Program-made: the position numbers and the translations under genes
NCBI GenBank assembly: GCA_001179505.1
Contig: CDMY01000327.1
Location: 1-64,000 of the forward strand
DNA from: Vitrella brassicaformis CCMP3155
Lineage: Eukaryota > Protista > Chromerida
Reading direction: 5' to 3'
Length of the DNA: 64,000 bases
The notes under the pieces: generated by a model
Told to the model about the DNA's origin: nothing
What the model saw: the letters and a program-made list of their open reading frames with translations, nothing else
Database searches by the model: none
Shown here: one piece after another, positions 33,527 to 56,796 of the stretch
Layout: every line of letters starts with the position of its first letter
Numbering within the stretch: position 1 is the first letter of the stretch

Positions 33527-34629
33527 CACAGGCCCTGCACTGTGTACTGGTGTGCCCTTCCTCTTGCTGGACTTTTTGCATTGTCGTGAGCTGAACGTCA
33601 CCTTTGCAAAAACACAATGACAGAATCGACCCGCTGCGTTTGTCTTCTCGACTCATGTCATATCATAAGATTGCTCGATACGAACCGATGCTTGGGCGGC
33701 CGTTATCGCCCGTTCATGTATCTTAACTTCTATTACATGAAGAATGCACATGGTGTGAGTCAGAATGCCAACCAGTGGCTGTCTGTCTGTGTGTACATAT
33801 CTGTCTGTCTGTCTGTCTGTCTGCCAGGTAGTCTGTCTCTTCCTCAACCAGTCAGCACCTCGTTCAAGTGGCCATGTGTGTGAATTGAAAGGGAGTTACC
33901 GATGTGATCAGTTGACTTCATGGACACAATGCAAGCGGTCCAACCGCTCACCGGGGCGTGACATTGACAGATCCGACCTGGCAAATGCATTCATGCGTTC
34001 ATCATGAACCCCGCAAATGTGTCCGTATGTACATGACGTATGAATCTGTCTCAGCCACGATTCCCATCAATCATCCGGCCATCCGTACATTGATGTATAG
34101 AGATAGAGAGACCTTTGCAGCCATCCTCGTATCAGTCGGTCCACACATACCCGCACCCTCTAACACCTCGGAGGGTCGCCATACCGTGGTGGTGGACTAC
34201 GGATGTGTATGCTATGGTGGTGTGCTCTATGTGTATGCTATGGTGGTTGTGTGCTCTGTGTGTATGGTGTGGAGCCTCCTTTTCCTTCTGTTGACGAGGG
34301 TCTTACCACGGACCCAACGAAAGCTAATACAGACCTATGGAAACCAAGACAACCACGTACACCAACCATGTGCACTGTTGCCTACCGACCTTCTCTCTTT
34401 GCCTACCGTGAATTCATCGTAGACCTGTTGAGATCATACTGTTCTGTTGGAAACCGCATGGCATGGGTGCTGAGGAACCGCCGCCACTGACAGAGGCAAC
34501 ACATTGCCGTGGCAACGAGCGGCTGTGCGCACCTGCAGCTGCCAGATCCACCAGATCCCTCCACTCCTGGCTCACTGCATACGGAGACACACAGCATGGG
34601 TGACATCCATATAGCTACGCTGGCGCCGC

Positions 34630-35160
34630 CTACAAAGTCCAACGAATACTAAACAGCTGAAACACGGACAATTTGTGAGTATGTGTGGGCTCTGTGCGTA
34701 CCGTCTGGTTTACGGGCTGCTGCTTGGGAGCCTGTTCGCCGAACCACCAGAAGCCACTACACCTCTGACAAAACCAAAACACAGACATACGTGCGTGTCG
34801 GACGCGTTCCAATATTGACGCGTTCCATCCGATGTGTTGTATTGGAGGAGGAAGTGAAGAGTTTCGTCCCCACTGGTCGGCTTTGTACACTTCAACCAGC
34901 AGGCCTTTGACCATGCCGCCCACCTGCTTCGGCGCGAAACACCTGCCAACACACCCACCCACACACCCGTACCACGAAACCTGAAAGAAATCCCACATAC
35001 CGACGCTGCCATAGATGTGATGAATAGATGGATGCACCACGTAGCTCCTTCCCTCTACGCGCTTACCATCACCTGTCAACGTGGTGTCGGTCCTGGTCGG
35101 CTGACGGAAGGTAAAGAACACGAAAGGATTCGGAACTCGCATGCCAGTCCAACTCATTCG
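34630..35160 (-). other. Possible small spliced gene or transcript, head-to-head with the S74 gene
   Basis: Several GT…AG intron-like segments on the minus strand (gtaagc…ggcag, gtttcg…agcag, gtatgt…gtcag) inside ORF 34630..35352; no recognisable domain. Confidence 0.25.
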
Positions 35161-35363
35161 TCCGTCAGCAGCAGCGGCTTCGAGAGCAGCGTCTGCAGGC
35201 GTGCGAGCTTGGGGGTTCCCACTTGTGAAAGAGATCCTTGTCGCCTCGAAATGAGTAGGGAGGGAATCTCCGATGGGTGAGGTGGGAGGAAATAGGTTTC
35301 GGCATCCTGTATTCATGTATCTGTGTTGTTGCAGGACCCGATGATGGTTCATTGACGGTGTTG

Positions 35364-38300
35364 ATGGTGTGGCAGTTCTTTCTATTTCTCTTCACATTTT
35401 TTTCCTCTGTAGCATCATGGTACGTCTGCCTGGCATCTGACGGTCTTTCGTCCATTGGAATTTTTGCCATGCAACGTGTCTGATGTGTGCAGGGTCCTGG
35501 TAGGAAAGAGCGGCGAGCTTACTTTCCTCGGGCCTCTCGATATCGGTGAGCCAGCCAGTTTGAAGGCTGCTGATGAGGAAACAAAGGTGCTTGTGCGGTT
35601 TCATGCAGACCCGTCCAATGCAGACCGGGCGCAGATATCATTCAGGTCGCTGGGTGTCAAGAAATGGCTCGTCTACCTCGAGGATCTGGTATGAAAGGAC
35701 GCATGATGTCCACATATGAAATTCCCATATAGACGGTTCTGGTGTCTGTGCATGGCCCTTTGCATTCAGTCGCCCGCCAACGCATTGGACGGCGAGCCGG
35801 ATTTCGCCATTGGCAGCAAAGGTAAGAAGCAATGAATAGAGAAACTCACAATACGGCCTCTCTCCTTCGTCCCACAGAATCGGGGGCATTCATTGTATTG
35901 GATAGCTATGGAGGGGCTGCTTTTAATACCACACTATCCGTGCGAGACTCTTCCATCATTGGCGGCGGGCTGTCAGTCTATCAGCAAGCTCACATGGGTG
36001 GAGAGCTTTCCGTGCAAGGCGTAAGTCTTTTGGGGTCCACTCTTTCTATCTTCGATACCTCCTTCTTCGGCAGCACACTGTCTGTAAGAGGCATCAGCCA
36101 ATTAGGAGGAGGACTAACCGTCGCCGATCATGCCGACTTCGGCAGCTCCCTCTCGGTCCATGAGTGGACAAACCTCGGATCGACCTTATCCATCTTCGAC
36201 ACCGCCACCTTCGGAAGCTCTCTATCCGTTCGGGGCATCTTGAAGGTCGGGTCAAAGCTTGAGGTTTTCGGCGAGACTACTCTTGGCAGTGTGCTGTCCA
36301 TTGCTGGTGATGCAATCGTCGGGAACACGTTGTGCGTCATCAGTTTTACCAAAATGGGAAGCTCTCTTTCAGTCTACGAATCGGCGGTCCTCAATTCTAT
36401 TCTCTCTGTCCGCAGCTATGCACTCTTAGGTAGCAGTCTTTCACTGACGAGCTTCGCGTTGCTAGGGAGCTCTCTTTCGGTCGGTGGCGTCTCGCATTTT
36501 GGATCCCCCGTGTCGATCTTTGATATGACAACAATTGGAAGTGCTCTCTCAATCCACCACTTTACGCATGTGGGAGGGGCTTTATCTGTCTTCGGCCGAT
36601 TGGATGCTGACTCTACACTCTCCGTTAGAAGAAATGCGGTCATTGGCGAAACATTATCGGTCGACTCATTCGTTCGTTTCGGGTCTTCACTCTCTATTTT
36701 CGGGATGGCGCGGTTCGGAGCTAGTTTGTCTATCTTCGATTTTTCGTTGGTAGGAAGCTCTCTGTCTGTTCGATCCTTTCATCGATCAGGATCAAGCTTG
36801 TCGGTTTTTGGGGCTACAAGACTTGGCTCATCACTATCAGTGGTGGATTTTGGTGTTTTTGGGGCTTCCTTGTCGGTGTTTGGTATTGCAACGCTCGGAA
36901 GTGCTCTTTCGGTCCTCGATTACGTGGGGCTGGGGAGCAGTTTGAGCGTGGGGAGCTTCGTTCAGCTGGGGAGTTCGCTATCACTGAGATCATTCGCGAG
37001 AATGGGTGACACTTTGTCGGTGTTCGGCTTGGCCCGTCTCGCCAGCACCCTGTCCGTATTAGACTACGTGTCTTTGGGCAGTTCTTTATCTGTCCGTCAG
37101 TTTGCATATCTCGGCAGCACGTTGTCTGTTGAAGACTCATCGACATTCAACAATGTTGAAATCCGGGGCACTTTGAATGTCGTGAGTGGAGCGACCCTTA
37201 ATCTACAGGCTGGATCGACATTCGTACTCGATTCTAGCAGTCCAGGGGCGGTCACAATCGATACAGATGCTTGCAGTGTTATCCACGCCAGCGGCTGCAA
37301 TAGTTCATCAGATAGACGACTGAAAACGCTTATTCAGCCAGTGGAAGGTTATCTGTCCTGGGCTTCCCGTTCTGGGCGGCATCACGTCTCGAGAAGCAAA
37401 CGGAACCTTTCGGCTGTCTCGTCGAGGGATCGTGATAGCGTCGAGCATCTTATCGACAGGTTGCGCCCCGTCAAGTTCGAATGGAAACAGGTACACATAC
37501 ACCTCGTCAAGAAGCATCACAAATGGGTTATGCTTTGCAGCCTCACGAAGGCATCAAGAGATCCAATAGAGTGCACTTCGGCCTTATAGCGCAAGTCAGC
37601 ATGCCCTTGTCAATGACCGAATATCCCATTCGTCACTTTCCTCTGTCTTCAGGATGTGGCAACTTTGTTGCCTGAGGTTGTTTCAAAGGAACCCAGGACA
37701 GGCACACTGAGGATTCGCTATATGGTGCGTACACGCGATGAACAAGAAATTACGTCAAGATGGAAACTATGTTTGTTGCTGCTCGTGCCTGTCAGGACTT
37801 CATTTCGATTCTTTTGGAGAGTGCCAAGCAGCTTCATCGGCGCTTCCGGGTATATGCATTGCATGAACGGGATCGGGGTCATTCATTGCTTGTCTCTTGT
37901 TTCAGGTGTTAGAGCGACGAGTTGCAAGCCTCGACTTCCCCAATCTGGACCCATATTCTAATATCACAACTACTGCACGACTACATAGTGGCCCACCAGT
38001 GAACAGCCTCAGCAGCCTCAGCGTGCCTCTAGAGGCCCTCTACTCACTCTTTACAAGCGAGCCTCTGTCTTCTATCGCAAGCAACAGCACCCGCCTATCT
38101 CGAAGTCATCCGTCAGTCCATTCACTTGGGCATCGTCTCAAGAGAGCAGCATTAGACCTCAAGAATGTCCTCCAACAGGAGGTAAGACATCTCCGGGCTT
38201 CTGTCGAAGCCGACAGACAGTATACAGTGGCGCAATCGGGTGTCTTCCGCCGGCTACGAGCTGTCGAGAAACGAGTGCGCGTCGTTCAGCAGGCCATTAG

Positions 38301-38694
38301 AAGTACGGAGGCTGCCCTCAGGCGACGTGAGAAGAAACTATTCTCCCACACATGGCCACCAAGGAGGATGCTACCCTCTATCCCCGCGGTTAGACAGTCT
38401 GCAGCAGAGAGGATGGACGCACATGAGAGTGACCATGAGGTGGATTCCCTAAGACGGAAGATTGAAGATATGGGGGCTTCCACAGCGAGAAGAATCAACG
38501 ACATGGCGCGGCGCCATGAGGAGGCCATCAAGCTACACCAGGAAGAAATCCGGCTGCTCAAGGAGCAAAATAGACGTCAAGATGAGGAGATTCGGCTGCT
38601 CAAACAACAGCTGCAGCGTCCTCTCGCCGGACACGCATCCTCTACTCGAGCCCCAAGAGACGAAGACTATACACTGATAGAGGCACCACGCTGA
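35364..38694 (+). CDS. Secreted phage-tail-fibre-like protein: signal peptide, 34 x 12-aa beta repeats, peptidase S74/ICA domain, coiled coil (about 961 aa)
   Basis: join(35364..35419,35493..35688,35770..35821,35878..37490,37541..37594,37653..37724,37796..37849,37906..38694), all GT-AG and in frame. N-terminus MVWQFFLFLFTFFSSVASW; ICA motifs SSSDRRLK, LIDRLRPVKFEWK, HFGLIAQ|DVATLLPEVV, LRIRYM|DFISILLESAKQL; then heptad-rich helices. Confidence 0.88.
35922..37145 (+). repeat. Coding tandem repeat, 34 units of 36 nt (consensus [LFV]-G-S-[ST]-L-S-[VI]-x-x-x-x-x)
   Basis: From FNTTLSVRDSSI (35922) to LGSTLSVEDSST (ends 37145): 1224 nt = 34 x 36, no indels, DNA diverged between units. Confidence 0.92.
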
Positions 38695-39019
38695 CGCGAT
38701 GTGACGGCATGTGTCTTGTGTGTGATATACATTCTATAACCCTTTCTCTGAAGCTTCTTTGTGCTCTTTCTATTCTTCTGAAAAGACAAAGTGTACGAAT
38801 GAAGTATAAGGATGTTGTCAATCCTTCATCTCCCATTTCGTAGCACTGCCGCAGTGTCAAGCCATGAACATGGTTTGCAGACAGCACTGTGCCAACCTTT
38901 ATGGTTGAGTACAAACTGAGCACCCAGTGGGAGGGACGCCGCAGAAGAGAGTCAAGCGTCGGCCCTCGGCATATCCGCTTCCCTGTCTGCTTGTTTGTGT
39001 GTGTGTGTGTGTGTGTGTC

Positions 39020-49400: not shown

Positions 49401-52400
49401 CGCTAGAAATGCACTGTCTCCCTTGCACATGTCATTCGTGTGTTGTGTTTGGGCGTCCCCCCATCAGAGTGCTCTCCCGGCTGCGAGTTGCGTGATCTGG
49501 GCAACACCGTCTGTGAGAAACCGTGCGACAACGAGGCCTGCAAGTTCGACGAGGGCGACTGCCGCGGCGAGTGCAAGTTGCCTGAGATGCCCGTGTCTGT
49601 CAAGTTCTCCCCCATCCGCATGTACATCGACGCCGGCGACATGGTCACCGTCACGTGCCCGGAGTCATCGCTGAGATTTCTTGACTTCCCGGAAGAGACC
49701 AAACTGGAGCTTACCTGCCAGTCAGGGGGAGCGATCGACGATGGCGGCTTCGGCTTGAACGAGACAAACGGCACTCTCATGATCCCTCCGTGCGTCCCCG
49801 CCGCGGAGGCCACACCAGTCGGTGCGTTGGGAGCTGGGGGAGGCGCTGATTTGGAGCCGACGGAGCCCCCTCCGCCTGACGACGAGCCTATGACAAATCC
49901 CCCGGCTGCCGGCGGGTCTAAGGGTCCATCGACGGTCTTCAATGGCACAGAGCGGTACTGCGAGGACGCCCCCGAGGTGAAGGCGCTGTCGGGCTACGAC
50001 TGCAAGGAGCTGACCACCAAGCTCAACCTCCCCTGTGCGGCCCAGCTCAAGGACGTGGGCTTCAAGCCACCGCCAGGCATCCCCGACACAGCAACGGTGG
50101 ACAAGTTCTGTCCGGCCACATGCGGCAAGTGCGAGGCCACCTGCGCTGATGAGTGTCTCGACTGGTTCCTCGCCAATGCGCACTGCGATCCTGCATGCGA
50201 CAATGCCGACTGCAAGTACGACGAGGGAGACTGCAAGAAGGGTGGGAGTGGCGGCGCCAGCGGGGGTGGCGGCGCCAGCGGGGGTGACGGCGCTGTCTCG
50301 GCTCAAGGAGGGGAGAGCACCACTGGACCGCCCGTGGAAGACATTGACTGCGATATTCTGGACAACCTCGACGAGATCGAGATCCCCGAGGAGTACTCGA
50401 AGCTCGTCACTGGCGTGTGCGAGGACAGCCCCGCTGTCACGGACCTGGGCTACACGTGCGCCCTCTTCAAGACCATCTCCAAAGACGACTGCGACATGAC
50501 ATTCGGGGAGCTGCTCAAGACCATCGGCAGCGGCGACACCGTGCCAACCCTGCCACCCACTGTGCCTGAGGAGACCAAGATCGGCGACGCCTGCCCCGTC
50601 ACGTGCGAGCTGTGCAAGAAGGGCGACACGTTCCTGCCCGACATCGTGCGAGACAAGCTCGGCTGCACGTCGACGGGCAAGCCCAAGCCGACACCGAGCA
50701 AGAAACCGGGCGGAGGGTGCCGGGCCGAGGACATATCTGAGAAGGACATCCCCAAGGAGTACCGGTCGATCGTCACGGGCAAGTGCGAGGACAGCAAGAT
50801 GGTGGAGGAGCTCGGCTACAACTGCAACCTGTTCAAAACCATCGCAAAAGAAGACTGCACGAAGGACTTCGACACGCTGCTCGAGACCGTCGGAGAGGGC
50901 GCCGACGTGCCCACTCTGCCTCCCAAGGTCCCCGGCACCACCACCGTTGCGGATGCATGCCCAGTGACGTGCGGTGAGTGCACTGAAGGCGAGCCCTTCC
51001 TCCCGCCCATTGTCCGCAAGACCCTCGGCTGCGAAGACGAGCCCAGCGAGCCCAGCGAGCCCAAGGACGACGAGAAGCCGACAGAGGCCCCTGGGGAGGC
51101 GCCTGGGGACTGTGAGGACAGCCCTCTCGTGTCGTCCTTCGACATCACGTGTGAGGTCCTGTTGGTCGTTGGCACGTGCAACGACACGATCTACGAGCTG
51201 CAGAAGAAGAACAAGCCTGACGCCACCTTCCCCTCGTCCATTCCCAAGGACACCCTCGTCAAGAACGCATGTCCCAAGAGCTGCAACGACTGCTCGGCGG
51301 TGATCCCGCTGCCTGACGACTTCTCACTTGACGCCGCAGACAAGCCGCCGACAGAGACGGCGGCGCCGTGCGCTGACGACCCCCTGGTCAACCAACTGGG
51401 CTACACGTGCGACCTGCTCAAGCAGTTTTCGACGGATGGGTGCAGGAGCAAGCTGCAGGACATGCTGCCCGAGGGGCAGAGGCTGCCTGATGGTGTGCCC
51501 AAGGGCTGGACGCTGGAGGACGCATGCCCGAGGACGTGCGGAGACTGCCCTGGCGCACCGGCACCCGACACAGCAGACGCAAGTGAGTGCCCATGGCACA
51601 AGACACAAAGGGCTTGGGATGTCGAAGCTCTCTCTTTCATTGGTCTATCTCATCTATGTGTGTGCGCAGGCTGTCAGGACAACCCCATGGTTGAGAGCCT
51701 CGGCTATTCGTGCGCGCGGTTCATCGAAGTGGGAGGCCGCGGCTGCGACACACTTCTGGTTGACCTGGCCGACGGTCAGACGCCCATTGACCTACCACCG
51801 ACGGCCAAGGTCAAGGACACGTGTCCCAAATCGTGCGGTGTGTGCGGCGGCCCCTCGTGCATTGACGGCCAGCAGAATGGCAAGGAAGAGGGGGTAGACT
51901 GCGGCGGCAACTGCAAGCCATGCAGCAAGAAGGCCGGCTGTTCCATCGAGAGCCTCAAGCAGCTGGGCACGGGAGTGGCCATCAGCCGCGCCTCTGGTGG
52001 TGCAGCAGTGGAGGGGCCGCCTGGCAGAGTGGCTCACGGCACCCGCCGTGTGCTGACCTGCTTGGAGGGCTACGAGGAAGTGGGTACTGGGTGGGGCTAC
52101 GACGTTGTGACGTGTCTCGACGGCAAGTTCACGGCTCCTCGGCTGCGGTGTGAGGAGGCGAAGGCAACTGTGTATGAAGGGCGGCTCAAGATCTACGGTG
52201 CTGAGGACTTCGACGAAGTCACCATTCCATATATACACGTGAGTGGGAGGGGAGGGGAGGGGAAGGGGACGCGCCCAGAGAAGCAAGCCAGCCTACTTGC
52301 AAGCCCTTCTGTCCTTTTGTGTGCTGTGCATGTGTGTGATCAGGAGGCCCTTCGTGACGCCATGAAGCTGCAGAAGTCCGAGGTGCAGCTGGGCGCAGTG

Positions 52401-55400
52401 GTCAGCAGCCTTGCTGCCGGTTCGGACTCCTTGCCCCCGCAAGGGGAAGAGGTGGCAGACTGCGGTCTCGATAACGTCGACATCCCGCCAGAGTACAAGA
52501 AGGTCGTCACGGGCGTCTGCCAAGACAGCGACAGTGTCTCCCAGGTCAAGATCTCCGGGACCGATATCACATGTTCGCTTCTCAAGCAACTCGCGGAAGG
52601 AGACTGCTCTGAGACGCTAGGCGGCCTCATGAAGCTGGCGGGCTCCGGCGGTCCCCAGCTGCCTGACGGCGTCCCTGCAGAGACCCCCATCTTTGACGCG
52701 TGCCCGGTAACATGCGGCAAGTGCAATGACGGCGACTTTTACGTGCCGTCCATTCTGATTGAGAACATTGAGCTGCCAAAGGGATGCGAAACCCTCACGG
52801 CATCGAGGAGGCGACAGCGGCGGCGCATGCAGGAGGGTAGGGACGGGGAGTTCCTGCAGATCGTCTTCTTCCTCGACATGCCCAACAAGAAGGACAAGGA
52901 CATCCAGGCCATCGTCAGTCGACGTGTCTCGGACCAGGGCAAGTTCAACGCCAACTTCATGGACGACTTCCGCTTTCTCCTTAAGGGCTCCTCCGTCACC
53001 CTGCCGCTGGGCAACTTCACCGACCCACCATCATCCGCCGCCCAGCTCCTCATCGACCGCAAAGCCACAGCAGAGATCGACCCCCCGCAAAGACGCCGTG
53101 TGAGCAAGAAGATGTTCGAGCTAGCCTTTCCAGGTAACCTCTCCGACACCTCGTCGCCCTCGCCTTCCCCCTGGACCATCCTCAGGAGACCTGGTATCGG
53201 CAGGCCCAAGATCGGCATGCCGGGCACGTGTGGCGGGCATGGTGGCAGCAAGAGTGAGGGCGATGACGGGTTCATTCCCGAGTGCTGTGAGCTGCTGGAG
53301 TCCCTTCTGCGCTTCCTGGACGGCGAGTGCGGGGCACTCCTGTACCGCGGCGAGATGAGCAGCGCGCGCGCAAAGGCCTTCTGCGAAGGTTCGCCTGGTT
53401 CCCAGGGCCAGAACCGCGGCAGTGACAGCTGCCACGAGTCCTTCAACCAGATACTGGAGGAGTCCCACAAGTTCCGCGACTCATGCCCCGCATGGGAGCC
53501 GCTCAAGACAATGGCCGACTCGTGGTGCGCCAAGGCCCCCGACCACCACCACAAGGACGGCAAGCGGGCAGCCTACTGCTTTGGTGACATTCTCAGCGAC
53601 CAGCGAGACATGGGTTTCAAGGGTCTGGCATCACGCAACACGAAGCGATTGGACCAGATCTGTGCATCCCACAGCTGTTTCCGATCCAATGTGCGGTACA
53701 TGACTGCTGTGCGGCAGCTCGCTGAGATGGGCGGCGAGGCGGCGGACGGCGAAGCGGCCACAGAGATCGAGCAGTTGAGAGGGCCAGTGCCGGCTGAGCT
53801 GCAGGAGGCCTTTGCCCGGGAGCAAAACGGCGGCCGGCTACCCTACTATGGGCCGTTCCGCGAGGAGCTGCTGGACGTCATGTGCGTCAGGGTGGGCAAT
53901 GAGTACTGCCAGACGACTGCACTGCTGGTGGCGGACGACAACCCAATCGACAACCCCGACATCGTCCTCAACCCATGCAGCTCAAGGTGCGGCAGCACAC
54001 ACATACGGTCTCAATGACTTACTTATTGTCTGTCTCTTCTCTCTGTTGCTGCAGGTGCTTGATGCCGGTCGTCTCCCGGATGGGCACCGCTCTCACACGC
54101 CTTGGCCTTGACCGACACAGCCCCTTCCACAGGCAGCTCGGGCAGCTCCTAGTGGCCTTCAGCCGATTCGCATGCAGTCGCACCACCGAGGGATCCAGCT
54201 GCAGAGGATACCTGTTCAGCCCGGGCACGTCAGGACGCAAGGATGGGTCGGCACTCCTCGCACCTCCCAGTGTGGATGCATTCGACCTGGCGGCGTGCCG
54301 CTCGCCCTGCCCTGCATCCTACGTGGGCGACGGCCAGTGCGACGCAGCGTGCTACAGCGAGCCGTGTATGTACGACGGGGGCGACTGTCTCTTCCAGAGC
54401 ATGTTTCCCCACGTGGCCGACAACCTGCTGGGAGGCATCTCGACGCCTGAATGTCTGCCGTATGAGGAGGACTTCAACTGCCCCAAGAACACCTGCCGTC
54501 TGCAGCTCATCGACGGCCTCGACAAGAGGGGGTGCTGTGTGGCCGCCGCCATGGAGATCCTCAGGGCGGCCCTGCAGGGCGATGTGGAGCAGACCACTCT
54601 TTTCGACGCCGCCAATGTCCCTGTCTGGCAAGTCGATAGGTGGGCAGATGACAGAAAGGATGCGTCAAAGATGTACATATTCATTCACAAGTGTGTTCCG
54701 GTGTCACGTCTCAGGAGTGTGCCGTTCGTCGAGCAGAAGTGTGGGCTGAGCCTGGACAGGACATGCAGTGCCGGCCAGTCGTTCCAAGTCAAGAAGACGG
54801 ACCTGTTCATCGAGAACCTCGACCACGAGGCACTCGCCAAGAACAAGGCAGCGCTTGGCTCTCTGGAGATGCTGGTGCAGGACGTGCTGGCGGGCAAGCT
54901 GGGCACAGTCCCCACCGACATCAACCGCATCGTCTTCCGGCCCAACATGACGACGCCCAGCTCGACCAATGCAGAGGTCTACTTCCAGGTTCCCACTGGG
55001 GATGCGAACTCGTTCATCACCAAGAGACTCGAACAACAGGTAAGATCCAAGTTCAGCGGTGAATCCAGAAGCATATTTCAATGCTTGTGTCTCATGTTCC
55101 CTGTGCAGCTCCGCTCGGGCTCTGCAACGGCCGCCTTGACTGCTGCCCTGCAGCAGCTGTCATCGCTGGAGAGTCTTATGTCTGACCCCAAGAGGCCTCT
55201 CCGAGCTGGCGTCGAGCCGCAACGGACCCACGACACCCTCCTGCGATCCGCTACAGTCAACCCGCTACCCCTTTCGCTCGCCAAGGCACCGGCGATCCCC
55301 CCGGCCGGCACGCTCGGCCTGAAGGATCTGGGCATGACACTCCCTCTTGAAGCGTGCAGCGAGGAAGAGGTTGACAAGGCAGCCAAGAGCCTCAAGATCG

Positions 55401-56796
55401 ACTCCCTCAAGTCATCCGTGCGGGCTTTCAAACACACCGAGGAGAGCTCGGTGTCGTGCGCCGACGGCTATTCGGCGACGCGCGGCAAGCAGCCCGACAC
55501 TCTGCTGTGCGACAACGGCAAGCTGATCGTCAAGAATGGCCTCCTGTGTCGGCAGATGTGCAGTGGAGAGTCGCCCGAGCTGCCCTTCAACGCCACGACT
55601 CCTCCGAGGGCGCCCTTCTTGGCCCCTAACGAGGCCGGCAACGTCAGCACCGAGGGCACGGTTCGCGAGGGTGGTGGCTATCGGGCAGTGGGTGAAGGGT
55701 ACATCCACGGGTCGTCGCGGGAGGTGTCTTGCTTGAAGGGTTACACAGCTATCGAGGGCAAGGCCCCCGAGACCATCGGGTGCGTCGATGGACAGTGGCA
55801 GGAGCTCAGACTCGACTGCAGAGGTGCGCAGAAATGGTCGCAAACACACGGGGCACGCAGTCGAATTCTGTTTCCGTCGTGTCTCCGCCTTGTTCACTGT
55901 CTGCAGCCGACTGCACGGAGCTGTCTCTTGGTGACGGCTATCGCGTCGAGGGCAGTGGCCTCACCCATGGAGACACCCGCAAGATCAAGTGCTCGCCCGG
56001 CTACTTCTCGACGAAGCTTGTCGCTGCCTCCACACACACACTGTCTGTGACGGTGACGTGCCAGGACGGCTCTTGGGCACCGCCGCAGCCCATCAAGTGC
56101 GTCAAGCCCGACACGACGACGAAAACACCCAGACAGGGCTTTTTCGTCTTCCTGAGGGACCTGTTTAGCGGCAACGCGGCCGTCGGCATCGTTGTGCTCA
56201 TCGTCTTTTGCGTGGTCATGGTCATCGCGTCGCTGCTCGCCTGGAAGTACTACTTCAAGGACAAGTCCATTCGCAACCACGAGGAGCGAGAGAAGAGGAT
56301 CCAGCAGCGACACGGCACCACACCAGTGACAAGAGACGGCACCAACAATCCATCAGCAGACCTGAGGGCCGCCGGGAGCAAGACCAAGGCGCCACACAAT
56401 GCTGAGGATGACTCGCTCACTCATGCCAGTGGGGGCCCCGAGACAGACCTCCTGTCCAGTGAGGGGCGGGAGAACAATAGCGACACCAGCAGCCTCGGCC
56501 CCAGCTCTGTCCGGATGGATGAGGGATCACGGTCCACCTTGCCGAACACACGGGGCGCATCATCAAACAACAAGGCGGGGCCCGACCGTCACGTGCCCTG
56601 GGCACCTCCCAGGACGGCCACTGAGGGAGGGGCGACACTCACAGACACCGACGACGACCTGACGTCGGCGGCTCACTTCGCGAGGGAGAGGAGACGGCAC
56701 TCATGGGGACAAGACGGCACGAGCTCTGTGGGGTCGGAGTGGACAGAGTCGAGCAGTTTGGCGGATCGACACAGGCCGAGGAGGCCGCCCGTCTAG
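46456..56796 (+). CDS. Large type I membrane adhesin B, paralog of A: SP, about 9 ShKT-like, 4 LNR, 6 TSP1, 5 Sushi/CCP, 2 SEA-like, Cys-rich helical region, TM, tail
   Basis: Signal WRVVLQLLFLLLLVVPLSAQ; CMDRPEV…VADICPETCGLC; six WxxWxxC TSP1 repeats at 47.3-49.1 kb; long exons 49.47-54.0 kb; CIDGQQNGKEEGVDCGGNCKPC; TM AAVGIVVLIVFCVVMVIASLLAW; ends RRPPV*. Confidence 0.87.

What the first reader, a model, noticed from the sequence alone, without database searches (positions are those of the whole stretch)
35364..38694. Intron-containing eukaryotic gene for a secreted, self-cleaving phage-tail-fibre-like protein
Seen directly: a signal peptide, 34 perfectly phased 12-aa beta repeats, then S-D-R-R-L-K (Ser at 37308-37310, Lys at 37323-37325), the rest of a peptidase-S74/ICA domain spread over four small exons, and long coiled coils. 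Established: ICA domains (phage K1F endosialidase, T5 L-shaped fibre, GA-1 gp12, and eukaryotic MYRF/MrfA) trimerise, chaperone triple beta-helix folding and then cut themselves off with this Ser-Lys dyad. Inference: the cell makes a rigid trimeric beta-helical fibre of roughly 500 aa per chain in its secretory pathway. That differs from the cytosolic transcription-factor release role of MYRF. Candidate uses are extrusome or trichocyst shaft, wall fibre or adhesive spike. Seven spliceosomal introns show it is a domesticated host gene rather than contamination. This is the best candidate for an undescribed system in the window.
Basis: partly seen in the sequence, partly recalled or inferred. 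Interest (0 to 1): 0.9.

Follow-up and report, generated by a model that had tools for sequence, protein, structure and literature searches.

The report
Spliced alveolate gene for self-cleaving fibre
A gene of the alga Vitrella brassicaformis encodes what looks like a secreted, phage-tail-fibre-like rod, built from 34 short beta repeats and ending in the self-cutting "chaperone" domain that viruses use to assemble three-chain fibres; it belongs to a large, unstudied family shared with dinoflagellates, Perkinsus and giant-virus-like contigs.

Summary
Window 35364-38694 (+) of Vitrella brassicaformis carries one intron-bearing gene. My model has 9 exons and 940 aa:
- a hydrophobic leader
- a conserved N-terminal module
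- 34 gap-free 12-aa repeats
- S-D-R-R-L-K at exactly the stated codons
- a Peptidase_S74/ICA domain split over small exons
- a coiled-coil tail

Pfam PF13884 scores 46 bits on the database protein, against a cutoff of 22. The predicted fold's best PDB match is the MyRF ICA domain. The Ser, Asp, Arg and Lys positions are invariant in 64 relatives. RNA contigs confirm the four ICA introns and join the last repeats to the ICA.

Corrections:
- There are probably eight introns; an extra in-frame 63-nt intron lies at 35546-35608.
- The public annotation starts inside the repeats and removes 38181-38399, which the RNA contigs retain.

Weak points:
- There is no RNA support for the four predicted 5' exons and only about 3x depth over most repeats.
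- The trimer, the cleavage and the secretion are all inferred.

The S74 domain is already auto-annotated, so this is not wholly undescribed. I found no paper on the family. It has 553 clusters at E<=1e-30, from dinoflagellates, Perkinsus, Chromera and probable giant-virus contigs. Other first-reader notes, unchecked, report more S74 genes in this genome.

Verdict: a new variant of a known kind, moderately interesting.

The parts
35364..35419 (+). Exon 1: start codon and 18-aa hydrophobic leader (MVWQFFLFLFTFFSSVAS), predicted signal peptide
   Evidence: This is the first in-frame ATG after an upstream stop. The GT donor is at 35420. The leader-to-[WF]VLVG junction is conserved in Perkinsus P0124, P0085, P0095 and P0030. 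There is no RNA support.
35420..35492 (+). Intron 1 (73 nt, GTACGT..CAG), predicted
   Evidence: Splicing creates the codon TGG (Trp) that aligns with Trp/Phe in homologues.
35493..35545 (+). Exon 2: start of the conserved N-terminal module (WVLVGKSGELTFLGPLDI)
35546..35608 (+).
   Evidence: All homologues lack exactly these 21 aa. Removing them gives LDIDPS, which matches IDIDPA/VDIDPS. There is no RNA evidence either way.
35609..35688 (+). Exon 3: N-module continued
35689..35769 (+). Intron (81 nt, GTATGA..CAG), predicted
35770..35821 (+). Exon 4: N-module continued
35822..35877 (+). Intron (56 nt, GTAAGA..CAG), predicted
35878..37490 (+). Exon 5 (1613 nt): end of the N-module, the repeat array, a 57-aa beta-rich linker, the cleavage motif and the first part of the ICA, including a 28-30-aa insertion
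   Evidence: RNA contig X6 record 30 covers 37136-37487 without gaps and continues across the next two introns.
35913..37136 (+). 34 phased 12-aa repeats, consensus [F]-A-x-[LF]-G-S-[ST]-L-S-V-[FR]-[GDS]; residues 93-500 of the 940-aa model
37308..37325 (+). S-D-R-R-L-K: predicted nucleophile Ser558 and general base Lys563 of the S74 dyad; the scissile bond lies before the Ser
   Evidence: The Ser, Asp, Arg and Lys positions are invariant in the 64-sequence alignment A2. The motif aligns to SDRRIK of the tail-fibre chain 6f45.
37308..37938 (+). Peptidase_S74 / ICA domain (with introns), residues about 558-689
   Evidence: PF13884 at 46 bits. The top Foldseek hits are 7dc3 MyRF ICA, then 3gud and 3gw6. 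PDB profile hits are 6f45, 8jov and 7dc3. All AFDB and Atlas neighbours are S74.
37491..37540 (+). Intron (50 nt), RNA-confirmed
   Evidence: Joint in X6 contig.
37541..37594 (+). Exon 6 (PHEGIKRSNRVHFGLIAQ)
37595..37652 (+). Intron (58 nt), RNA-confirmed
37653..37724 (+). Exon 7 (DVATLLPEVVSKEPRTGTLRIRYM)
37725..37795 (+). Intron (71 nt), RNA-confirmed
37796..37849 (+). Exon 8 (DFISILLESAKQLHRRFR), part of the ICA C-terminal helix
37850..37905 (+). Intron (56 nt), RNA-confirmed
37906..38694 (+). Exon 9: end of the ICA helix, a low-complexity linker, the coiled-coil tail and the stop codon
   Evidence: X6 record 31 runs 37905-38834 without a gap.
38113..38619 (+). Heptad-rich, predicted coiled-coil segments (residues 748-916)
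   Evidence: AF2 helix with block-mean pLDDT of about 77-97, heptad scan and weak coiled-coil Pfam hits.
38181..38399 (+). Segment removed as an intron in the public model P0001 but retained in RNA contigs
   Evidence: X6 record 31 and X1 record 8 read through it. It is in frame and adds 73 aa.

Best explanation
This is a genuine nuclear gene of Vitrella brassicaformis for a 940-aa precursor. Its parts are an ER signal peptide (1-18), a conserved N-terminal module (19-92), 34 x 12-aa beta repeats (93-500), a beta-rich linker (501-557), a Peptidase_S74 intramolecular-chaperone (ICA) domain starting at Ser558, and a roughly 250-aa coiled-coil tail.

Proposed mechanism (inferred from the ICA family):
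1. Three chains associate through the C-terminal helices and coiled coil of the ICA.
2. The ICA trimer templates folding of the repeat region into a trimeric beta-helical rod about 11-16 nm long.
3. The Ser558/Lys563 dyad cuts the bond before Ser558.
4. This releases the ICA and coiled coil and leaves a stable fibre of about 540 aa per chain.
5. By analogy with phage and Bdellovibrio MAT fibres, the conserved N-module would be the anchoring end and the newly exposed C-terminal end the tip.

The fibre is made in the secretory pathway. It most likely serves as an extracellular, wall-associated or adhesive fibre.

Shown: gene structure of the 3' half, S74 membership by sequence and fold, the intact motif, the repeat architecture, and the family distribution.
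Inferred: signal-peptide use, trimer, cleavage, destination and role.
For: - Repeats and motif read directly from the sequence.
- PF13884 above the curated cutoff.
- S, D, R and K invariant in 64 homologues.
- Best PDB matches of the fold model are the ICA structures 7dc3, 3gud and 3gw6.
- Profile hits to phage tail-fibre chains 6f45 and 8jov.
- Four ICA introns, and the repeat-to-ICA junction, seen in spliced RNA contigs.
- The spliced model is one open 940-codon frame with GT..AG at every intron.
- The leader plus N-module is conserved in Perkinsus olseni and three other relatives.
- Chromera P0090 places the same repeats N-terminal to a Sushi domain and a hydrophobic, TM-like segment (my reading of the sequence). 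This would put the repeats on the luminal or extracellular side.
- ICA biology: trimerisation through the C-terminal coiled coil, a Ser-Lys dyad, and release of a kinetically stable trimer (PMC8326128, PMC3742443).
- A cellular precedent has the same layout of signal peptide, conserved N-domain, fibre and S74 (PMC10769870).
- The four repeats of P0001 are disordered in a monomer model (pLDDT about 40). This is what an obligate oligomer would give.
Against: - No RNA contig covers the four predicted 5' exons. Most of the repeat array has about 3x depth, against 35-68x for the 3' part in the one spliced run. The main transcript may therefore start near 36,9xx, as the public 413-aa model does.
- The monomer AlphaFold2 model of the repeats is a low-confidence solenoid (mean pLDDT 55) with only weak left-handed-beta-helix hits. 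This neither shows nor excludes a triple beta-helix.
- No multimer prediction or biochemical test was possible.
- A signal peptide shows ER entry only. In an alga with a complex plastid, a leader followed by an aromatic residue could also route elsewhere. The acidic, conserved N-module does not look like a transit peptide (my assessment).
- Unlike phage ICAs, this one carries a 28-30-aa insertion and a long tail. Their effect on cleavage is unknown.
Confidence: 0.6

Rival explanations
1. The main product is the short, leaderless protein of the public annotation (from Met at about 37002). It would have about four repeats, the ICA and the coiled coil, and would be made in the cytosol. On this reading the long upstream repeat ORF is little or not expressed, and the "secreted fibre" reading is wrong for most molecules.
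For: RNA depth steps from about 3 (36423-36875) to 45-68 (from 36993) in run X6, with nothing over 35200-36315. The database model P0001 starts at this Met.
Against: - The upstream 1.6 kb keeps an uninterrupted frame, with repeat positions conserved at the protein level while the DNA has diverged.
- The N-module and leader are conserved across genera and across the predicted splice sites.
- Many database relatives that "start" at a Met inside a repeat are demonstrably truncated calls. Two examples are L083, where repeats run 3.4 kb upstream, and L085.
- The step coincides with a roughly 100-nt stretch of extreme k-mer depth that breaks assemblies.
- X6 is a small run, and contigs show presence, not absence.
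Confidence: 0.17
2. The gene is a fibre gene captured from a giant virus or polinton-like virus. It would be an endogenous viral relic, or a gene still serving a virus, rather than a host structural gene.
For: - The same 12-aa xxLSV repeat occurs in 910-930-aa proteins on a contig with NCLDV-like content: DHFR-TS, Asn synthase, RNase HII, YqaJ and glycosyltransferases (L081).
- 2783-aa and 4226-aa proteins with these repeats plus a C-terminal S74 lie on dense, intron-free contigs (L086, L087).
- S74 fibres are common in polinton-like viruses and occur in giant viruses (PMC12220804, PMC13659346).
Against: - The gene has eight introns, four of them RNA-confirmed.
- It has a eukaryotic leader.
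- Neighbouring ORFs gave no viral hallmark hits; they gave LNR/Notch domains or nothing.
- There is no paralogue or viral block in the window.
- Relatives occur across dinoflagellates, Perkinsus, Chromera and Vitrella with a shared N-module.
- IMG/VR holds only distant relatives matching little beyond the ICA, at 24-34% identity.
- An ancient transfer in either direction stays possible and is compatible with the best explanation.
Confidence: 0.1
3. The repeat region is a single-chain beta-solenoid, left-handed-beta-helix-like or bactofilin-like. The S74 domain would act only as a trimerisation or quality-control module, or be inactive, so no interdigitated triple beta-helix fibre is formed.
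For: The monomer AF2 model gives regular strands every 6 residues and weak matches to hexapeptide beta-helices. JGI auto-names relatives LpxA-like, and viral relatives score faintly on Bactofilin.
Against: - There is no Hexapep or Bactofilin Pfam hit on the Vitrella exon even at E<=1.
- Model confidence is low.
- The dyad and surrounding motif are invariant across the family, which argues for retained catalysis.
- Known S74 proteins with single-chain helices are still trimeric fibres or spikes, from my own knowledge of phage GA-1 gp12, whose ICA structure 3gud is among the fold hits.
Confidence: 0.13

Closest known systems
Phage tail-spike and tail-fibre proteins with a C-terminal intramolecular chaperone (K1F endosialidase 3gw6, GA-1 gp12 3gud, long tail fibre 6f45; Peptidase_S74, PF13884)
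   Same: SDxRxK Ser-Lys motif, ICA sequence profile and predicted fold, position directly C-terminal to a long beta-rich fibre region, and a C-terminal helix.
   Different: This is a eukaryotic nuclear gene with eight introns and an ER leader. Its ICA carries a 28-30-aa insertion and is followed by a roughly 250-aa coiled-coil tail rather than ending the protein. The repeat is a regular 12-mer with no match in PDB.
MYRF / Dictyostelium MrfA (the only eukaryotic ICA proteins described in the papers I found: PMC3742443, PMC3828593, PMC8326128)
   Same: The best structural match is the MyRF ICA 7dc3 (E 5.7e-4, prob 1.0). Both are eukaryotic, with ER-associated synthesis.
   Different: There is no Ndt80-type DNA-binding domain and no transmembrane segment after the ICA. 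Here the N-terminal part is luminal, behind a signal peptide, whereas in MYRF it is cytosolic. The released product would be a fibre, not a transcription factor.
Bdellovibrio bacteriovorus MAT (mosaic adhesive trimeric) fibres, S74 subgroup (PMC10769870)
   Same: This is a cellular, non-viral use. The order is the same: signal peptide, conserved beta-rich N-terminal domain, long fibre, S74 with SDxxxK. In MAT fibres, S782A blocks processing.
   Different: MAT fibres are bacterial. Sequence homology of the N-domain or fibre to the Vitrella protein was not tested. The MAT role is prey recognition, and there is no evidence for that here.
Giant-virus and polinton-like-virus fibre proteins with S74 (PMC12220804, PMC13659346), and the uncharacterised proteins P0140, P0161 and P0009 on probable giant-virus contigs
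   Same: They share the same 12-aa xxLSV repeat type at 35-42% repeat-level identity. P0140 and P0161 also carry a C-terminal S74.
   Different: The viral proteins lack the leader and N-module. They end about 90-115 aa after the Ser and are intron-free, and their ICA is only 29% identical. That these contigs are viral is inferred from gene content only.

Membership tests
[quoted passage not shown] | Pfam PF13884 profile match above the gathering score | tested here: met
   P0001 (identical to this locus) scores 46.0 bits, E 6.7e-12, against a cutoff of 22. A single exon alone gives no hit, because the domain is split by introns.
[quoted passage not shown] | Catalytic Ser and Lys five residues apart in an S-[DE]-x-R-x-K motif at the start of the domain | tested here: met
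   SDRRLK lies at nt 37308-37325. S103, D104, R106 and K108 are invariant in 64 relatives. The motif aligns to SDRRIK and SDERLK of PDB tail fibres.
[quoted passage not shown] | ICA fold | tested here: met
   In the AF2 model, the ICA region has block-mean pLDDT of about 52-93. Foldseek ranks 7dc3 chains at 1-3 (prob 1.0), followed by 3gud and 3gw6. All AFDB and Atlas neighbours are S74. TM-scores are modest (0.5 by target).
[quoted passage not shown] | Homotrimer formed through the C-terminal helices; templates an upstream trimeric beta-helix | not testable with these tools
   Only monomer prediction is offered. The C-terminal helix and long coiled-coil-like helix are predicted. The repeat region is beta-rich but low-confidence as a monomer.
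[quoted passage not shown] | Autoproteolytic release of the domain | not testable with these tools
   This needs expression of wild type against Ser and Lys mutants.
MYRF-type membrane-bound transcription factor | Ndt80/PhoG-type DNA-binding domain N-terminal to the ICA | tested here: not met
   No Pfam family matches the 551-aa exon even at E<=1. The region consists of 12-aa repeats.
MYRF-type membrane-bound transcription factor | Transmembrane segment C-terminal to the ICA | tested here: not met
   The highest 19-residue Kyte-Doolittle mean after the Ser is 1.15. The tail is charged and helical.
Hexapeptide-repeat left-handed beta-helix transferases (the JGI auto-name for relatives: LpxA/LpxD) | Hexapep Pfam match and acyltransferase fold | tested here: not met
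   There is no Hexapep hit at E<=1. Foldseek matches to left-handed-beta-helix proteins have E>=0.39 and prob<=0.09.
Bactofilin | PF04519 match | tested here: not met
   There is none on the Vitrella exon. The match occurs only on the viral-type relative P0009 and is faint on others.
Bdellovibrio MAT fibres | Sequence homology of the conserved N-terminal domain or fibre | not tested
The resemblance is in architecture only (PMC10769870).

The most novel reading that the evidence does not exclude
Myzozoan alveolates (dinoflagellates, perkinsids, chromerids) possess an ancient, expanded family of very long secreted fibres. These are built from 12-residue beta repeats and matured by a phage-type self-cleaving S74 chaperone. 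The architecture is shared with giant-virus fibres. This would be the first structural, non-regulatory use of the ICA fibre-assembly mechanism by eukaryotic cells, possibly as a component of the cell wall, the cell surface or extrusive organelles.
Probability: 0.45. Interest if true: 0.8.

Novelty: new variant of a known kind. Interest (0 to 1): 0.62.

Why it matters
In the literature I could search, the only eukaryotic ICA/S74 proteins studied are the MYRF-type transcription factors. There the domain releases a regulator from the ER membrane.

Here the same module sits where it sits in viruses, at the end of a long fibre, but in an intron-bearing cellular gene with an ER leader. The gene belongs to a family of at least 553 sequence clusters at 50% identity. 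These come from dinoflagellates, Perkinsus and chromerids, and many are from marine metagenome or transcript-derived assemblies.

If the product is a self-assembling, protease- and SDS-resistant trimeric rod, it is a candidate for an unidentified structural element of these ecologically and economically important protists, such as a wall fibre, surface adhesin or extrusome shaft. It would also be a clear case of exchange of fibre architecture between giant viruses and their hosts.

This locus is useful because, among everything I retrieved, it is the only one where leader, N-module, complete repeat array, ICA and tail lie in one gene. It also shows that the public gene model is truncated.

Tried and rejected
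- Tandem Repeats Finder on the region found nothing relevant. The repeats are too diverged at DNA level.
- Pfam on the long exon alone and on single small exons gave no S74 hit. The spliced database protein was needed.
- I considered an intron inside the ICA insertion (37348-37438, GT..AG). I rejected it because its 91 nt would shift the frame and RNA contig X6 record 30 reads through it.
- The public model's intron at 38181-38399 is not supported, because spliced RNA contigs retain it.
- tblastn of the exon against the window found no paralogue here.
- Pfam on ten neighbouring ORFs gave no viral hallmark, only LNR/Notch.
- An IMG/VR scan found only distant S74 relatives, mostly matching just the ICA.
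- A word-based search with the ICA region alone returned only the query.
- Foldseek of the repeat model against PDB gave no significant match.
- Literature searches found no paper on this eukaryotic family. I searched for repeat peptides, "Peptidase S74" with dinoflagellate, PF13884, "chaperone of endosialidase", Vitrella with tail fibre, and trichocyst proteomes.
- A spliced full-length protein could not be handed to the prediction or search tools, so the exon and the database protein were used instead.
Full report
**What is in the sequence**

The window comes from Vitrella brassicaformis CCMP3155. A 413-aa NCBI/UniRef protein (P0001, named "Peptidase S74 domain-containing protein" by UniRef) is 100% identical to part of the locus.

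The ORF 35832-37589 (+) translates into 34 consecutive 12-residue repeats with no insertion or deletion, at nt 35913-37136. The consensus is [F]-A-x-[LF]-G-S-[ST]-L-S-V-[FR]-[GDS]:
- Leu at position 8 in 33 of 34 repeats
- Ser at position 9 in 31 of 34
- Gly at position 5 in 30 of 34
- an aliphatic residue at position 10 in 34 of 34

At DNA level the units are only 43-47% identical, and Tandem Repeats Finder reports nothing. This is an old array kept by selection on the protein, not a recent expansion.

A 57-residue beta-rich linker follows the repeats.

**Gene model**

With GT..AG introns the locus gives one open frame.

Homologues lack exactly the 21 residues encoded by 35546-35608. That stretch has GTGAGC..CAG ends and is in frame. 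Removing it turns LDI-GEPAS...FHA-DPS into LDIDPS, which matches IDIDPA and VDIDPS in relatives. I therefore prefer nine exons, eight introns and 940 aa.

Logan contigs of one run (X6) carry four splice joints: 37491-37540, 37595-37652, 37725-37795 and 37850-37905. One spliced contig runs from 37136, the end of the last repeat, through the cleavage motif into the downstream exons. The cDNA therefore joins repeats and ICA, at least for the last repeats.

Another spliced contig runs uninterrupted from 37905 to 38834. A contig of run X1 covers 38231-38590. The 219-nt intron that the public model removes (38181-38399) is thus retained in these RNAs.

The weak point is the 5' half. In X6, contig depth is:
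- 35-68 from about 36993 onward
- about 3 at 36423-36875
- nil upstream

X6 holds only 19% of the sampled words of 35364-36900. The public model starts at the Met at about 37002, inside a repeat. I could lay reads only once, so the 5' exons rest on splice-site logic and homology alone.

**Leader and N-terminal module**

Exon 1 encodes MVWQFFLFLFTFFSSVAS. Splicing then creates Trp followed by VLVGKSGELTFLGPLDIDP.

Perkinsus olseni proteins start MYYLIVQVVLLLLQPAGA|WVLVGRDGTITFLGRIEID (P0124). Three other relatives (P0085, P0095, P0030) show a hydrophobic leader directly before F-[VI]-[LM]-V..G.[ILV]TLLG..DI. The similarity continues across all predicted exon boundaries up to FNTTLSV, the first repeat. 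This supports both the splice model and ER entry.

Chromera P0090 carries the same repeats N-terminal to a Sushi domain and a hydrophobic, TM-like segment (my reading of the sequence). That would place the repeats on the luminal or extracellular side.

Most database relatives appear to begin with a Met inside a repeat, but these are truncated calls:
- On contig L083 the repeat array continues 3.4 kb upstream of the called start of P0005.
- On L085 it continues to the contig end.

Among everything retrieved, no database protein combines the N-module and S74. This Vitrella locus is the only one where all the parts sit in one gene.

**S74 / ICA membership**
- PF13884 matches P0001 at 46 bits against a cutoff of 22.
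- In an alignment of 64 relatives, the S, D, R and K positions of the motif are invariant, as are four later positions.
- A profile of that alignment finds phage tail-fibre chains 6f45 (E 7.6e-10) and 8jov, and MyRF 7dc3. SDRRIK and the GLIAQEVE..LP..V block are aligned.
- In an AlphaFold2 model of P0001, the ICA region has block-mean pLDDT of about 52-93.
- Foldseek's three best PDB hits are the MyRF ICA chains (E 5.7e-4 to 1.2e-3, prob 1.0), followed among weaker hits by 3gud and 3gw6.
- Every AFDB-cluster and Atlas neighbour is an S74 protein.
- The domain differs from phage ICAs. It has a 28-30-residue insertion after the first helix, which is present in RNA and variable in relatives. It also has a roughly 250-residue tail with long predicted helices of block-mean pLDDT about 77-97 and heptad patterns.
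- There is no DNA-binding domain and no transmembrane segment, so it is not MYRF-like.

**The repeat region**

As a monomer, the four repeats in P0001 are predicted disordered, with pLDDT about 40. The whole exon gives a low-confidence model (mean pLDDT 55) with short strands every six residues. Its only PDB matches are insignificant hits to left-handed beta-helices and other solenoids.

This does not distinguish an interdigitated triple beta-helix from three parallel solenoids. The tools offer no multimer prediction.

The rod length of about 11-16 nm is my own estimate, taking 4.8 A per rung and either 18 residues per turn or one face per repeat.

**Relatives and origin**

The word-based search found 248 relatives. 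Most have repeats plus PF13884. Sources include Alexandrium, Oxyrrhis, Pfiesteria, Biecheleria, an unnamed dinoflagellate, Perkinsus olseni and Chromera.

An exhaustive profile search gives 553 clusters at E<=1e-30 and 20,448 at E<=1e-10. The latter set includes generic S74 or repeat proteins.

The same 12-residue xxLSV repeat occurs in 910-930-aa proteins without S74, such as P0009. P0009 lies on a contig with bifunctional DHFR-TS, asparagine synthase, RNase HII, a YqaJ nuclease and glycosyltransferases.

Proteins of 2783 and 4226 aa, with these repeats and a C-terminal S74, lie on dense, intron-free contigs. I read these contigs as giant-virus-like from gene content only. IMG/VR itself gave only distant relatives matching little beyond the ICA.

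The architecture is therefore shared between probable giant viruses and myzozoan cells, and the direction of transfer is open.

The Vitrella gene itself behaves as a host gene. It has eight introns and a leader. Its neighbours are LNR/Notch-domain ORFs and, per another first-reader note, an adhesin-like gene. No viral hallmark was detected.

Other first-reader notes on this genome, unchecked, report several more S74 genes. One is described as a "giant" 12-residue-repeat fibre.

**Mechanism proposed**
- Shown: the parts list and S74 membership.
- Established for the family: ICA domains trimerise through their C-terminal helices, template the upstream trimeric beta-helix, and cut before the Ser with a Ser-Lys dyad, leaving a kinetically stable trimer (PMC8326128, PMC3742443). 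A cellular organism, Bdellovibrio, uses the same layout of signal peptide, conserved N-domain, fibre and S74 for surface fibres, and its S782A mutant blocks processing (PMC10769870).
- Inferred here: ER import, C-to-N folding of a trimeric rod nucleated by the coiled-coil tail and ICA, cleavage before Ser558, release of a 383-aa ICA-plus-tail fragment, and export of a fibre of about 540 aa per chain anchored by its conserved N-module.
- Its role as a wall, surface or adhesive fibre, or an extrusome component, is a guess from secretion and from the distribution in walled or predatory myzozoans.

**Novelty**

The S74 annotation already exists in UniRef for this and related proteins, so the domain call is not new.

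What appears undescribed is the full architecture, the corrected gene model, the N-module, the size and range of the family, and its link to giant-virus-like fibres. I found no paper in about 8.4 million full texts. That library misses most subscription journals.

I class it as a new variant of a known kind, with moderate to high interest.

Noticed in passing
window 36975-37070: This stretch of about 100 nt (repeat units FARMGDTLSVFG and LARLASTLSVLD) has k-mer depth about 800x that of its flanks in DNA runs and about 150-200x in the RNA run. It appears as many 45-72-nt contigs 95-99% alike. A loose end reads ..SVLDSV.., so the high-copy sequence is itself a repeat of this type. It probably comes from a paralogue with hundreds of near-identical, recently amplified units elsewhere in the genome. 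It coincides with the start of the public gene model and may be why that model is truncated.
   Followed up: partly
window 38181-38399: The public model P0001 splices this out (GTAAGA..CAG, 219 nt, in frame). A spliced RNA contig (X6 record 31) and an X1 contig read through it. It is therefore either alternative splicing or an annotation error.
   Followed up: yes
L081:7586-10345 (P0009) and neighbours: A 919-aa protein with the same 12-aa xxLSV repeat but no S74 lies on a 91-kb contig beside DHFR-TS, asparagine synthase, RNase HII, a YqaJ nuclease and glycosyltransferases. The gene content looks like a giant virus.
   Followed up: partly
L086:10001-22681 (P0161, 4226 aa); L087:4922-13273 (P0140, 2783 aa): These are huge intron-free proteins with the repeats and a C-terminal S74, on dense contigs. 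Their neighbours match DUF5767, DUF5759, DUF5672, patatin and PA14/GLEYA. They are probably viral fibres with the same architecture as the Vitrella gene, minus leader and tail.
   Followed up: partly
L083:1-6099; L085:1324-7315: Repeat arrays of relatives run for more than 3 kb beyond the called ORFs, broken by short gaps (introns or frame changes). Many "330-460-aa" database members are therefore fragments of far longer proteins.
   Followed up: yes
window 49440-56050 (+): Two long ORFs (1525 and 691 aa) each carry an LNR (Notch) domain, at E 2.5e-6 and 1.5e-8. This looks like another gene for an extracellular-type protein.
   Followed up: no
window 35364-36900 (as query): Marine sediment metagenomes (runs X11-X18) hold 5-39% of the sampled words of this Vitrella stretch. 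This suggests Vitrella or a very close relative is present in those sediments.
   Followed up: no
window 34001-38000: GC content is 0.51-0.53 across this gene, against 0.55-0.62 for most of the window. This may simply reflect the Ser/Leu/Phe/Val-rich repeats.
   Followed up: no
window 37112, 37121, 37122 and 37013: All DNA and RNA contigs of runs X2 and X6 differ from the window at 37112 (C>T), 37121 (G>A) and 37122 (T>C). At 37013 the reads are mixed T/G. These are either assembly errors in the repeat or contributions from paralogues.
   Followed up: no
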